DNA of 64,000 nucleotides from Podarcis erhardii. Its lineage: Eukaryota. Position numbers and translations under genes: made by a program. The stretch lies in NCBI GenBank assembly GCA_964252035.1, contig OZ176207.1, one strand, 5' to 3'. Positions within the stretch are counted from its first letter, which is position 1; each line of letters opens with the position of its first letter. This document shows positions 45,093 to 46,269 of the stretch, piece after piece. The notes under the pieces are model-generated. The model saw nothing but the letters and a program-made list of their open reading frames with translations. It was not told the origin of the DNA and made no database searches.

Positions 45093-45520
45093 TACTGTAT
45101 TTCCCATTCTGTCTGGAATTGATGGGTGTTGAGCCACAATGTGTGGAGGACCCCATGTTGACAGCCCTACCCACTTGAGAGTTGGCCACAGTTGGCTCTG
45201 GCCACTTGGCCCTGTGGACAATACCCAGCCAGATGGACCATACCTACAGTGGATGCCTACGGAGTTAAATTTGACTCTATATAAGGCATTTTCCTTGTTC
45301 CTACGTGCTTGGGGGATCATAGGCGCCGACTCCATGGGGCCTGAGGGGGCCCGAGCCCCCTCAAAAATTCGTTTGGGGGGCTCTGCCCCCCCAATAATTT
45401 AAGAAAATTATTAGTTATATTATGCTTTGTAAAATCACTCCTGAGGGAGAGTTACTTAGCGGTTCTGAGGAGCCGCTGTTGTTTCGGCAGGGGAAAAACC
45501 GCCGCCCGCGAACCGCCAAG

Positions 45521-45521
<1 letters not shown>

Positions 45522-45569
<48 letters not shown>
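45522..45569. repeat. (CT)n microsatellite directly 5' of the captured ATP1B3 ATG
   Basis: Direct reading. Confidence 0.95.
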
Positions 45570-45572
<3 letters not shown>

Positions 45573-45675
45573 ATGGCCAAGGAGGAGGAGAAGCCCTTCA
45601 GCCAGTCTATGGCCGGAGGTTCATCTACAACCGCCAACAGCGGCGAGTTCCTGGGGCGAACGGCCAAGAGCTGGG
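45573..45675 (+). pseudogene. ATP1B3: Captured, non-processed exon 1 of Na,K-ATPase beta-3 with donor and intron-1 start
   Basis: [14 protein letters not shown]...[13 protein letters not shown]|gtgag, with FIYN in the adjacent frame. Matches the ATP1B3 N-terminus as I recall it (human [37 protein letters not shown]), including the phase-1 intron position. No further ATP1B3 exons seen in the window. Confidence 0.9.
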
Positions 45676-46269
45676 GTGAGGAGGGCGGGCAGGCGAGCGA
45701 GCGAGCGAGCAGGGAAGGGAGGGGAGGGGGCGGCCGGCACGAGGGGCGGTGGGAGGCGCGGCGCGGCGGGCACTTGCCTTGCCCACCACGCATCTCTCTC
45801 CTTCTCGGTCTCTCTCCCTCCCTCAGCTGGCGAGGGGGCCACGAGGCGGGCGGCAGCAGCAGCAACGGGCCGGGAGCGGCTCTTAGAAAACTTCCCGGGG
45901 CAGGACCCCGGTATGGGCCACCCCAATATTTTTTATAAGTCGGCGCCCCTGAAGTCGACGCCCCTGTGGGGGATTCCTGCAGCCATCTGGTTTGCTTCTG
46001 TAAAAATCTGAGTCCTGGACTAAATGGATAATTGAGGCATTAAACTGTTAGGCATATGGTACTTTCAGTGAGACTGCCAAAAATCCTGATAGCTGAAAGG
46101 CACGGACAGTACTGAAAATGGGATTTGAAAATCATTAATCCGTGAAGAGATCAGCCACGCAACCCTGCAACTTCTTGCAGACACGTCGATTTCAATGTCC
46201 AGAATAACCAAAAGCATCAAAGCTAATATTTGGACAGAGGTCTTTCCAGTAGCTGCCAATGTTGTTTTT

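What the first reader, a model, noticed from the sequence alone, without database searches (positions are those of the whole stretch)
45318..45966. Pack-hAT: DNA transposon that captured exon 1 of ATP1B3 and inserted at the MIB1/ABHD3 promoter region
Seen: a 649-bp element with hAT-type TIRs and a perfect 8-bp TSD (TGGGGGAT). Inside are a GC-rich leader, ATG...GAGTTCCTGGGGCGAACGGCCAAGAGCTGGG encoding [12 protein letters not shown], an intact phase-1 donor gtgag and about 250 bp of GC-rich intron-like DNA. Established: FIYN and [12 protein letters not shown] are diagnostic of the Na,K-ATPase beta-3 N-terminus (beta-1 and beta-2 differ), and ATP1B3 is not syntenic with MIB1/ABHD3 in human. Retention of the intron start shows DNA-level capture, not retroposition. 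Gene-capturing TIR elements are well known in plants (Pack-MULEs) and much less documented in vertebrates. Inference: a mobile promoter-plus-first-exon cassette that may be multicopy, placed 830 bp upstream of the ABHD3 ATG on the same strand.
Basis: partly seen in the sequence, partly recalled or inferred. Interest (0 to 1): 0.9.

Follow-up and report, generated by a model that had tools for sequence, protein, structure and literature searches.

The report
Lizard hAT transposon carrying ATP1B3 start
A small cut-and-paste (hAT-type) transposon that picked up the 5' leader, first exon and start of the first intron of the sodium-pump gene ATP1B3 has spread to about 60 places in this lizard genome, and one shortened copy sits between MIB1 and ABHD3; gene capture of this kind is known but rarely multicopy in vertebrates, and nothing shows that this copy does anything.

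Summary
Window 45318-45966 is a non-autonomous hAT-like element with a perfect 8-bp target-site duplication (TGGGGGAT). Its core (45439-45884) is copied from the ATP1B3 5' end. The true ATP1B3 gene lies on another chromosome (C5), without transposon ends.

- **Family:** about 61 copies share identical cargo breakpoints. 49 of 63 collected copies have perfect, mutually different 8-bp duplications. This means one capture followed by repeated transposition.
- **This copy:** it is a derivative with an internal deletion of about 186 bp, a -7/+1 indel pair inside the exon, and a 15-bp duplicated 3' end. FIYN is therefore out of frame here.
- **Empty site:** contigs from four read sets carry the site lacking exactly 657 bp. 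One of these sets differs from the window by only about 0.35% in the flanks, so the insertion is lineage-specific and possibly polymorphic.
- **Decay:** copies lose CpGs about 7 times faster than other sites, in cargo and backbone alike. The exon shows no constraint. The family therefore looks like methylated, decaying DNA.
- **Function:** any promoter or ABHD3 effect is untested, and no RNA data were found.

The kind is known (Pack-TIR, Tan 2021; HelibatN3/NUBPL). This scan had already noted the same family (s1-232447) and other Pack-hAT families (CENPW, GNAL, SPR) in this genome.

The parts
45310..45317 (.). Left copy of the 8-bp target-site duplication TGGGGGAT
   Evidence: The empty-site joint 45309->45967 in reads keeps one copy.
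45318..45438 (+). 5' arm of the hAT-like backbone (terminal inverted repeat 45318-45331). It is cut short at family position 121 by the internal deletion.
   Evidence: It is 93-99% identical to positions 1-121 of the other copies. The first 34 bases occur about 1028 times in the genome. The deletion junction is unique in the genome.
45439..45572 (+). Cargo derived from the ATP1B3 5'UTR and TSS-proximal region. It lacks the first 88 bp of the family's cargo and includes a (CT)24.5 repeat at 45521-45569.
   Evidence: Aligned to parent L031 and to full copies. Tandem repeat from TRF.
45573..45675 (+). Cargo derived from the ATP1B3 exon 1 coding part. It is 103 nt against 109 nt in the parent because of a 7-bp deletion and a 1-bp insertion. 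The frame stays open, but the FIYN segment is frameshifted.
   Evidence: The parent peptide matches human beta-3 over residues 1-36 at 50 bits.
45676..45884 (+). Cargo derived from the start of ATP1B3 intron 1. The GT donor is at 45676-45677, and the cargo ends at ...GGCTCTT.
   Evidence: The sharp 3' breakpoint is shared by 60 copies. There is a TT microhomology with the backbone.
45885..45951 (+). 3' arm of the backbone (terminal inverted repeat 45938-45951)
   Evidence: Identical 67-69 bp are present in all capture copies and in the 1.6-2.1-kb long variants.
45952..45966 (+). 15-bp tandem duplicate of the 3' terminus (one base changed). It is part of the inserted unit.
   Evidence: It is unique in the genome. 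The target-site duplication and the empty-site joint lie outside it.
45967..45974 (.). Right copy of the 8-bp target-site duplication TGGGGGAT
41034..41264 (-). Context: MIB1 exon 1 coding part (start codon at 41264)
   Evidence: ORF. It scores 183 bits to human MIB1 (4xi6_A).
46793..46939 (+). Context: ABHD3 exon 1 coding part (49 codons, phase-0 donor), 826 bp downstream of the element
   Evidence: Sequence. The ABHD3 identity rests on my recollection of the human N-terminus and on MIB1 synteny, not on a tool.

Best explanation
The window holds one copy of a young non-autonomous hAT-type DNA transposon family. An ancestor of the family acquired, at the DNA level, 535 bp of the ATP1B3 5' end: 217 bp upstream of the ATG, the 109-nt coding part of exon 1 with its splice donor, and about 210 bp of intron 1.

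The likely mechanism is template switching during repair or replication of a hAT element. That would give a mosaic of four pieces:
- a 5' arm of 203 bp shared with an abundant ~500-bp family;
- 17 bp resembling another part of a related long variant;
- the ATP1B3 cargo;
- a 69-bp 3' arm shared with the long variants, joined through a TT microhomology.

A hAT transposase supplied in trans then mobilised the chimera to about 61 sites. The copy in the window is a further deletion derivative. It inserted into the 5.5-kb spacer between the divergent MIB1 and ABHD3 genes, in the ABHD3 orientation, after this lineage split from related species. It may still be polymorphic.

Shown here: the structure, the parent, the copy number, the target-site duplications and the empty site. 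Inferred: the capture mechanism, trans-mobilisation, and that the copy is most likely a methylated, functionally inert insertion.
For: - **Ends and duplications:** a perfect duplication at the window copy. 49 of 63 copies have perfect, all-different 8-bp duplications.
- **Single capture:** both backbone/cargo junctions occur 61 and 60 times with 0-3 mismatches and zero control hits.
- **Parent:** it lies on C5 without arms. It differs from the majority sequence of the copies at 1/531 sites. It is ATP1B3 by PDB matches, with the downstream exons present.
- **Empty site:** the joint 45309->45967 skips 657 bp with 8 shared letters in all four read sets. Two single contigs carry 243-245 bp and 618 bp of flank.
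- **Mosaic and microhomology:**
- **Decay:** substitutions per site per copy are 0.73% (cargo) and 0.69% (backbone) at non-CpG sites, against 4.9% and 4.6% at CpG sites. The exon rate of 1.05% is about the same as the 5'UTR rate of 1.14%.
- **Broken exons:** 13 copies share a +1 frameshift and 10 have ATG changed to CTG.
- **Literature:** multicopy Pack-TIRs, their preference for GC-rich targets and the template-switch (FoSTeST) model are described in PMC8277862. The 8-bp duplications and YARNG ends of lizard hATs are described in PMC3014272.
Against: - No autonomous element with these ends and a hAT transposase was identified. only shows that long hAT-dimerisation-domain reading frames exist in the genome.
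- The 5' end reads CATAG, which departs from YARNG at position 3.
- The target-site profile is only weakly hAT-like.
- No read contig bridging flank to element was displayed for this locus. The filled allele therefore rests on the assembly alone.
- The copy has about 5-7 private substitutions, roughly 1%. That sits uneasily with a very recent insertion, although several of them lie in low-complexity DNA.
- 'Inert' is inferred from family-wide CpG decay, not measured at this copy.
Confidence: 0.9

Rival explanations
1. The copy has a function. The captured ATP1B3 leader, first exon and donor act as an alternative promoter or first exon for ABHD3, or otherwise alter regulation of the MIB1/ABHD3 pair.
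For: - The copy has the same orientation as ABHD3 and lies 826 bp upstream of its ATG.
- The GT donor is intact and the short frame is open.
- A proportion of animal Pack-TIRs are transcribed, often as chimeras with neighbouring genes (PMC8277862).
- Bat Helitrons carrying the NUBPL 5' end feed cryptic splice sites into host transcripts (PMC4224331).
Against: - The cargo starts just after the parent's CCAAT-, CRE- and ETS-like motifs, and this copy lacks a further 88 bp.
- The donor is phase 1 whereas ABHD3 exon 1 ends in phase 0. Splicing to exon 2 would therefore be out of frame (inference).
- Family-wide CpG decay equals that of the backbone, which suggests germline methylation.
- The empty allele is present in the closest read set.
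- No RNA holder was found.
Confidence: 0.07
2. The element is a cut-and-paste transposon of another superfamily that also makes 8-bp duplications (for example P or Zisupton-like), not hAT.
For: No transposase was linked to these ends. The 5' end is CATAG rather than YARNG. The target profile is weak.
Against: - The 3' end CAGGG fits YARNG.
- The inverted repeat is 14 bp and the duplication 8 bp, as in all Anolis hAT families (PMC3014272).
- The Y-R / R-A pattern at target positions 3, 4, 6 and 7 is weakly palindromic, as hAT targets are.
- The genome has several long open hAT-type reading frames.
Confidence: 0.04
3. The feature is an assembly artefact: a chimeric join placing a repeat copy at this locus.
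For: All four read sets show the empty form. No displayed contig bridges flank to element. The copy's deletion junction and terminal duplication are unique in the genome.
Against: - A mis-join would not create an exact 8-bp duplication of the target. The reads' empty site holds one copy of that 8-mer and lacks exactly 657 bp.
- The left-flank contigs of two read sets stop exactly at 45317, as expected at a branch between a filled and an empty allele.
- Contigs drop rare variants and break at repeats.
Confidence: 0.02

Closest known systems
Multicopy Pack-TIRs of vertebrates, e.g. Pack-hAT-N8_XT of Xenopus tropicalis carrying 291 bp of the CAPSL 5'UTR (Tan et al. 2021, PMC8277862)
   Same: - A non-autonomous hAT carries a GC-rich 5' gene fragment.
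- The parent lies on another chromosome and is not linked to a transposon.
- Copies have distinct target-site duplications.
- There is microhomology at a breakpoint.
   Different: There are about 61 copies here against 3 there. That survey found only 4 multicopy cases in 100 animal genomes. The cargo here spans leader, a complete first coding exon with its donor, and intron. The host is a lizard.
[quoted passage not shown]
   Same: The same gene parts were captured at the DNA level (5' end up to partial intron 1) and then amplified and dispersed.
   Different: HelibatN3 is a rolling-circle Helitron with no inverted repeats and no 8-bp duplication. It has about 1000 copies. Its capture clearly includes a promoter.
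Pack-MULEs of rice and other plant Pack-TYPE elements
   Same: They are TIR elements with host gene fragments between their arms. They favour GC-rich cargo, are often multicopy and are mostly non-functional.
   Different: They belong to the Mutator superfamily with 9-10-bp duplications. They number thousands of elements from over 1000 genes, often with several genes per element.
Anolis carolinensis non-autonomous hAT and hobo families (Novick et al. 2010, PMC3014272)
   Same: They are lizard hAT elements with 8-bp duplications and CAG-type ends. They are young families with mosaic structures formed by recombination and uptake of extraneous DNA.
   Different: The extraneous DNA reported there is mainly other transposons. 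The passages returned by my two term searches of that paper, which included 'exon', 'host gene' and 'gene fragment', mention no host first exon; I did not read the paper in full. The end sequences differ.

Membership tests
hAT superfamily (non-autonomous member) | 8-bp target-site duplication | tested here: met
   49 of 63 copies have perfect 8-bp duplications, all different. 19 of 20 backbone relatives do too.
hAT superfamily (non-autonomous member) | Short terminal inverted repeats starting with YARNG | tested here: inconclusive
   The inverted repeat is 14 bp and matches at 12/14. The 3' end CAGGG fits the motif. The 5' end CATAG departs at position 3. The motif is as stated in PMC3014272.
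hAT superfamily (non-autonomous member) | Autonomous relative with the same ends encoding a hAT transposase (with hAT dimerisation domain) | tested here: inconclusive
   The genome has 39 PF05699 hits, several in open frames of 556-1170 aa.
hAT superfamily (non-autonomous member) | Insertion by transposition: empty site with a single target copy | tested here: met
   The joint 45309->45967 skips 657 bp with 8 shared letters, in four read sets.
Pack-TIR (gene-fragment-carrying TIR transposon) | Host-gene-derived segment lies between the transposon arms | tested here: met
   The 535-bp cargo lies between a 220-bp 5' arm and a 67-bp 3' arm.
Pack-TIR (gene-fragment-carrying TIR transposon) | Parental copy identified and not associated with the transposon | tested here: met
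   At L031:3768-4304 on C5, only the cargo matches within 8 kb. The locus is ATP1B3 exon 1.
Pack-TIR (gene-fragment-carrying TIR transposon) | Multicopy through transposition after capture: same breakpoints, different duplications | tested here: met
   Junction 33-34-mers give 61 and 60 hits with 0 control hits. The duplications are all different.
Pack-TIR (gene-fragment-carrying TIR transposon) | Transcription or chimeric transcripts (not defining, but decides function) | not testable with these tools
No RNA run holds the stretch.
Processed retrocopy of ATP1B3 | Intron loss, poly(A) tail, variable-length duplications | tested here: not met
   The donor and 209 bp of intron 1 are retained. There is no poly(A). 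Inverted repeats and 8-bp duplications are present.
Functional ATP1B3 gene or paralogue at this locus | Remaining exons of a Na,K-ATPase beta subunit are linked | tested here: not met
   PF00287 hits for exons 2 onward occur only at five loci on C4 (two), C5, C13 and C20. Element copies match positions 2-32 only.

The most novel reading that the evidence does not exclude
This lizard lineage may host a hAT backbone that repeatedly swaps its core for CpG-island 5' ends of host genes and amplifies each chimera to tens or hundreds of copies. The cargoes would be ATP1B3 here, plus CENPW, GNAL-XL and SPR according to earlier unchecked notes of this scan. That would be a vertebrate counterpart of rice Pack-MULEs or bat Helitrons. 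It would scatter ready-made leaders, start codons and splice donors next to genes such as ABHD3, and some of them might be used.
Probability: 0.25. Interest if true: 0.75.

Novelty: new member of a known kind. Interest (0 to 1): 0.5.

Why it matters
Gene capture by cut-and-paste transposons is common in plants. In vertebrates it is almost always single-copy and independent of transposition. The one survey I read found four multicopy cases in 100 animal genomes (81 of them vertebrate); the one example whose copy number I read there had three copies.

A family of about 61 copies is therefore a clean natural example of capture followed by transposition. It has an identified near-identical parent, sharp breakpoints, subfamily structure and a probably still segregating insertion. 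It can be used to test capture models, since microhomology and mosaic arms are visible. It can also be used to measure what happens to a CpG-island fragment once it is mobilised: here it decays like methylated DNA.

For this particular locus the practical meaning is modest. It is a presence/absence marker near the ABHD3 promoter whose effect is unknown.

Tried and rejected
- **Naming the C5 gene with exon 4:** the PDB search did not separate the paralogues. Exons 1 and 2 did.
- **Fetching long-variant and orphan 3' ends to look for an autonomous element:** The same limit blocked loci for the PF05699 hits.
- **Sampling cargo types behind the shared 5' arm with a pattern ending in a run of N:**
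  - The first form was too long.
  - The allowed form was noisy, with 111 hits against 130 control hits. Behind this arm it showed two continuations that recur (the ~500-bp family core and the ATP1B3 type). It also showed one copy (C10:72187356) in which the 17-bp linker is followed by other sequence.
- **RNA evidence:** two run searches listed no RNA holder, which says nothing about silence.
- **Siblings of the window copy:** its deletion junction and terminal duplication each occur once in the genome.
- **Literature:** searches for a published ATP1B3-carrying or lacertid Pack-hAT found none.
- **Rejected readings:** the true ATP1B3 gene, a retrocopy, and a transposition-independent gap-fill duplication.
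- **Not used:** the bacterial promoter/terminator scan, because it does not apply to a vertebrate.

Full report
**Observation.** The sequence at 45310-45974 is as described. An 8-bp direct repeat, TGGGGGAT, brackets a 649-bp insert (family D13).
- The insert starts CATAGGCGCCGACT and ends ...AGTCGGCGCCCCTG, followed by a 15-bp tandem repeat of that end with one change.
- Inside are a (CT)24.5 run, an ATG at 45573, the [11 protein letters not shown] codons, a GT donor at 45676 and GC-rich sequence up to 45884.
- MIB1 exon 1 lies at 41264-41034 on the minus strand (183 bits to human MIB1 4xi6_A).
- An exon that I recognise from memory as the ABHD3 N-terminus starts at 46793 on the plus strand.

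The element therefore sits in a 5.5-kb spacer between two divergent genes, 826 bp upstream of the ABHD3 ATG and in the same orientation.

**It is a family.**
- A search of the window's own genome (1.5 Gb, 326 contigs; the window is on C8) returned dozens of near-full matches at 90-95% identity. Every one had an extra stretch of about 186 bp between query positions 121 and 123.
- Full copies are about 820 bp. The window copy is a deletion derivative, and its deletion junction occurs once in the genome.
- I collected 63 copies. 49 have perfect 8-bp target-site duplications, and all 49 are different.
- The two backbone/cargo junctions, searched as 33-34-mers with up to 3 mismatches, occur 61 and 60 times with no control hits.
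- All copies therefore share the same breakpoints. This means one capture event followed by about 60 transpositions.

**The parent.**
- A Pfam Na,K-ATPase beta scan of the genome found five multi-exon beta-subunit loci, plus many isolated matches to model positions 2-32, which are the element copies.
- One such match, C5:73515001, lies 22 kb upstream of exons 2 onward of a beta gene at C5:73537042-73554584.
- That locus (L031:3768-4304) matches positions 221-754 of a full copy at 97.4% including gaps. Nothing in 8 kb matches the transposon arms.
- The alignment shows sharp breakpoints. Homology starts 217 bp upstream of the ATG. It runs through the 109-nt coding part of exon 1 (36 codons plus 1 base, phase 1) and ends about 210 bp into intron 1.
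- The exon 1 peptide matches human beta-3 (9kcg_B) over residues 1-36 at 50 bits, against 28 bits for the next paralogue. Exon 2 scores 76 against 40 bits. The gene is the ATP1B3 orthologue.
- Because the exon is conserved to human, the direction of copying was gene to transposon.
- The retained donor and intron exclude retroposition.

**Age and decay.**
- The majority sequence of the copies (computed inside a script only, for a non-viral repeat) differs from today's parent at 1 of 531 aligned sites.
- Over 50 well-aligned copies, substitutions per site per copy at non-CpG sites are 0.73% in the cargo and 0.69% in the backbone. At CpG sites they are 4.9% and 4.6%.
- Cargo and backbone have thus aged together. 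The former CpG-island DNA loses CpGs as fast as the rest, which is the signature of germline methylation (inference).
- The exon rate (1.05%) is no lower than the 5'UTR rate (1.14%).
- Of the 62 copies examined for the exon (all collected copies except L023), 34 still have an open exon frame. 18 of those are identical to the parent peptide (my count from the table).
- 13 copies share a +1 frameshift, including the window copy, and 10 share ATG changed to CTG. There are therefore subfamilies and no sign of selection for coding.
- With a squamate neutral rate of the order of 1e-9 per site per year (my own rough knowledge), 0.7% means a few million years.

**The window copy.**
- It belongs to the +1 subfamily and has an additional 7-bp deletion. 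That restores the frame but leaves FIYN out of frame.
- It has about 5-7 private substitutions, several of them in low-complexity DNA.
- Its terminal 15-bp duplication is unique in the genome.

**Empty site.**
- Contigs of four public read sets from four coded organisms were laid on 44700-46700. All four show a joint from 45309 to 45967 that skips 657 bp, with 8 letters fitting both sides. That is the element plus one copy of the duplication.
- In organisms C and H, single contigs of 966 and 1389 letters carry 243-245 bp of left flank and 618 bp of right flank.
- In organisms A and B the joint is carried by 21-22 letters plus the 8-mer, and their left-flank contigs stop exactly at 45317. I read this as a branch in the assembly graph (inference).
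- Flank differences to the window are about 0.35% for A (3/869), 1.8% for B, 2.4% for C and 3.2% for H (my arithmetic on table 8).
- The insertion is therefore absent from related species and from at least one haplotype of the closest sample.
- No displayed contig bridges flank to element, so the filled allele rests on the assembly alone.
- Summed contig depth over the cargo suggests that organisms A and C also hold tens of copies. The tool warns that this figure is not a copy number.

**Backbone and mechanism.**
- The first 34 bases of the element occur about 1028 times in the genome.
- Of 20 such places fetched at random, 16 are elements of 445-519 bp and 3 are variants of 1.6-2.1 kb. All 19 have perfect 8-bp duplications. 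For the 20th no 3' end with a matching duplication was found.
- The capture element shares positions 1-203 with the short family but only the last ~35 bp of its 3' end.
- It shares its last 69 bp with the long variants, which share only positions 1-97 at the 5' end.
- Positions 204-220 resemble a segment near position 90-106 of the long variants. They also occur at C10:72187356 followed by different sequence.
- At the 3' junction, backbone and parent share TT.
- This mosaic with microhomology fits template switching during repair or replication of a hAT element, followed by transposition. That is the model proposed for multicopy Pack-TIRs in PMC8277862. I infer the mechanism; it is not shown.
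- The parent's CCAAT-like, CRE-like and ETS-like motifs lie within the 35 bp just upstream of the 5' breakpoint (read by eye). The cargo may therefore lack the activating part of the promoter.

**Superfamily.**
- For hAT: 8-bp duplications, a 14-bp inverted repeat, a CAGGG 3' end, and a weak Y-R / R-A target profile. These agree with lizard hAT families (PMC3014272).
- Against or unresolved: the 5' end CATAG is atypical, and no transposase could be linked to these ends.

**Function.**
- Nothing measured supports one.
- The phase-1 donor does not match the phase-0 end of ABHD3 exon 1.
- The copy lacks the first 88 bp of the cargo, and the family decays like methylated DNA.
- No RNA run was found.
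- I rate an effect on ABHD3 or MIB1 at about 7%.

**What is known.**
- Tan et al. 2021 (PMC8277862) catalogued 370 Pack-TIRs in 100 animal genomes. Only four are multicopy (three in Xenopus, one in alligator). One example is a hAT-N8_XT carrying 291 bp of the CAPSL 5'UTR in three copies.
- Bat HelibatN3 carries the same gene parts of NUBPL in about a thousand copies, but it is a Helitron (PMC4224331).
- My literature searches found no description of this family.
- Earlier notes of this scan, unchecked by me, report another copy of this same ATP1B3 family (s1-232447). They also report hAT carriers of CENPW, GNAL-XL and SPR first exons in the same genome.
- This is therefore a new member of a known kind, notable for its copy number and as part of what may be a recurrent process in this lizard.

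Noticed in passing
L034:101-615, L036:101-577, L044:101-611 (G000 C1); roughly 750 or more copies genome-wide: The abundant ~500-bp element shares the 5' 203 bp of the ATP1B3 carrier. Its core is GC-rich, with a CCAAT box and GC boxes, so it looks promoter-like. It may itself be a captured gene 5' end, possibly the GNAL-XL carrier that earlier scan notes describe. I could not test this.
   Followed up: partly
L038:101-2181, L039, L049 (G000 C1): Long variants of 1.6-2.1 kb share the first 97 bp and last 69 bp of the element. They hold a 154-bp unit repeated 3.3 times at 94%. About 200 such 3' ends exist in the genome.
   Followed up: partly
window 44834-45101: A very high-copy repeat lies just upstream of the insertion site. 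Summed contig depth is 10^6 or more in all four read sets, and there is a 16-bp tandem unit at 45041-45077. It is probably a SINE tail.
   Followed up: no
L023 (G000:C4:7162007-7165519): One ATP1B3-carrier copy is 1693 bp long, with a perfect duplication (CCCTCCAC). About 870 bp of extra DNA sits inside its 5' arm. This is either a nested insertion or a second uptake.
   Followed up: no
G000:C10:72187356-72187390: Here the 5' arm plus the 17-bp linker of the carrier is followed by sequence other than ATP1B3. It could be a progenitor backbone or a deletion derivative.
   Followed up: no
window 45521-45569 versus L031:3958-3981: The (CT)n repeat of the ATP1B3 leader has expanded in the copies. 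It is about 24.5 units in the window copy against about 12 in the parent, and its length varies among copies.
   Followed up: partly
G000 C4:34655969-34687957, C4:80837920-80843857, C5:73515001-73554584, C13:3235968-3255629, C20:11248671-11260848: The genome has five Na,K/H,K-ATPase beta-subunit loci. Only the C5 locus was named (ATP1B3).
   Followed up: partly
window 46178-46199 and 46264-46274: The ABHD3 upstream region differs between the coded species by a 22-bp indel and several small indels (table 4).
   Followed up: no
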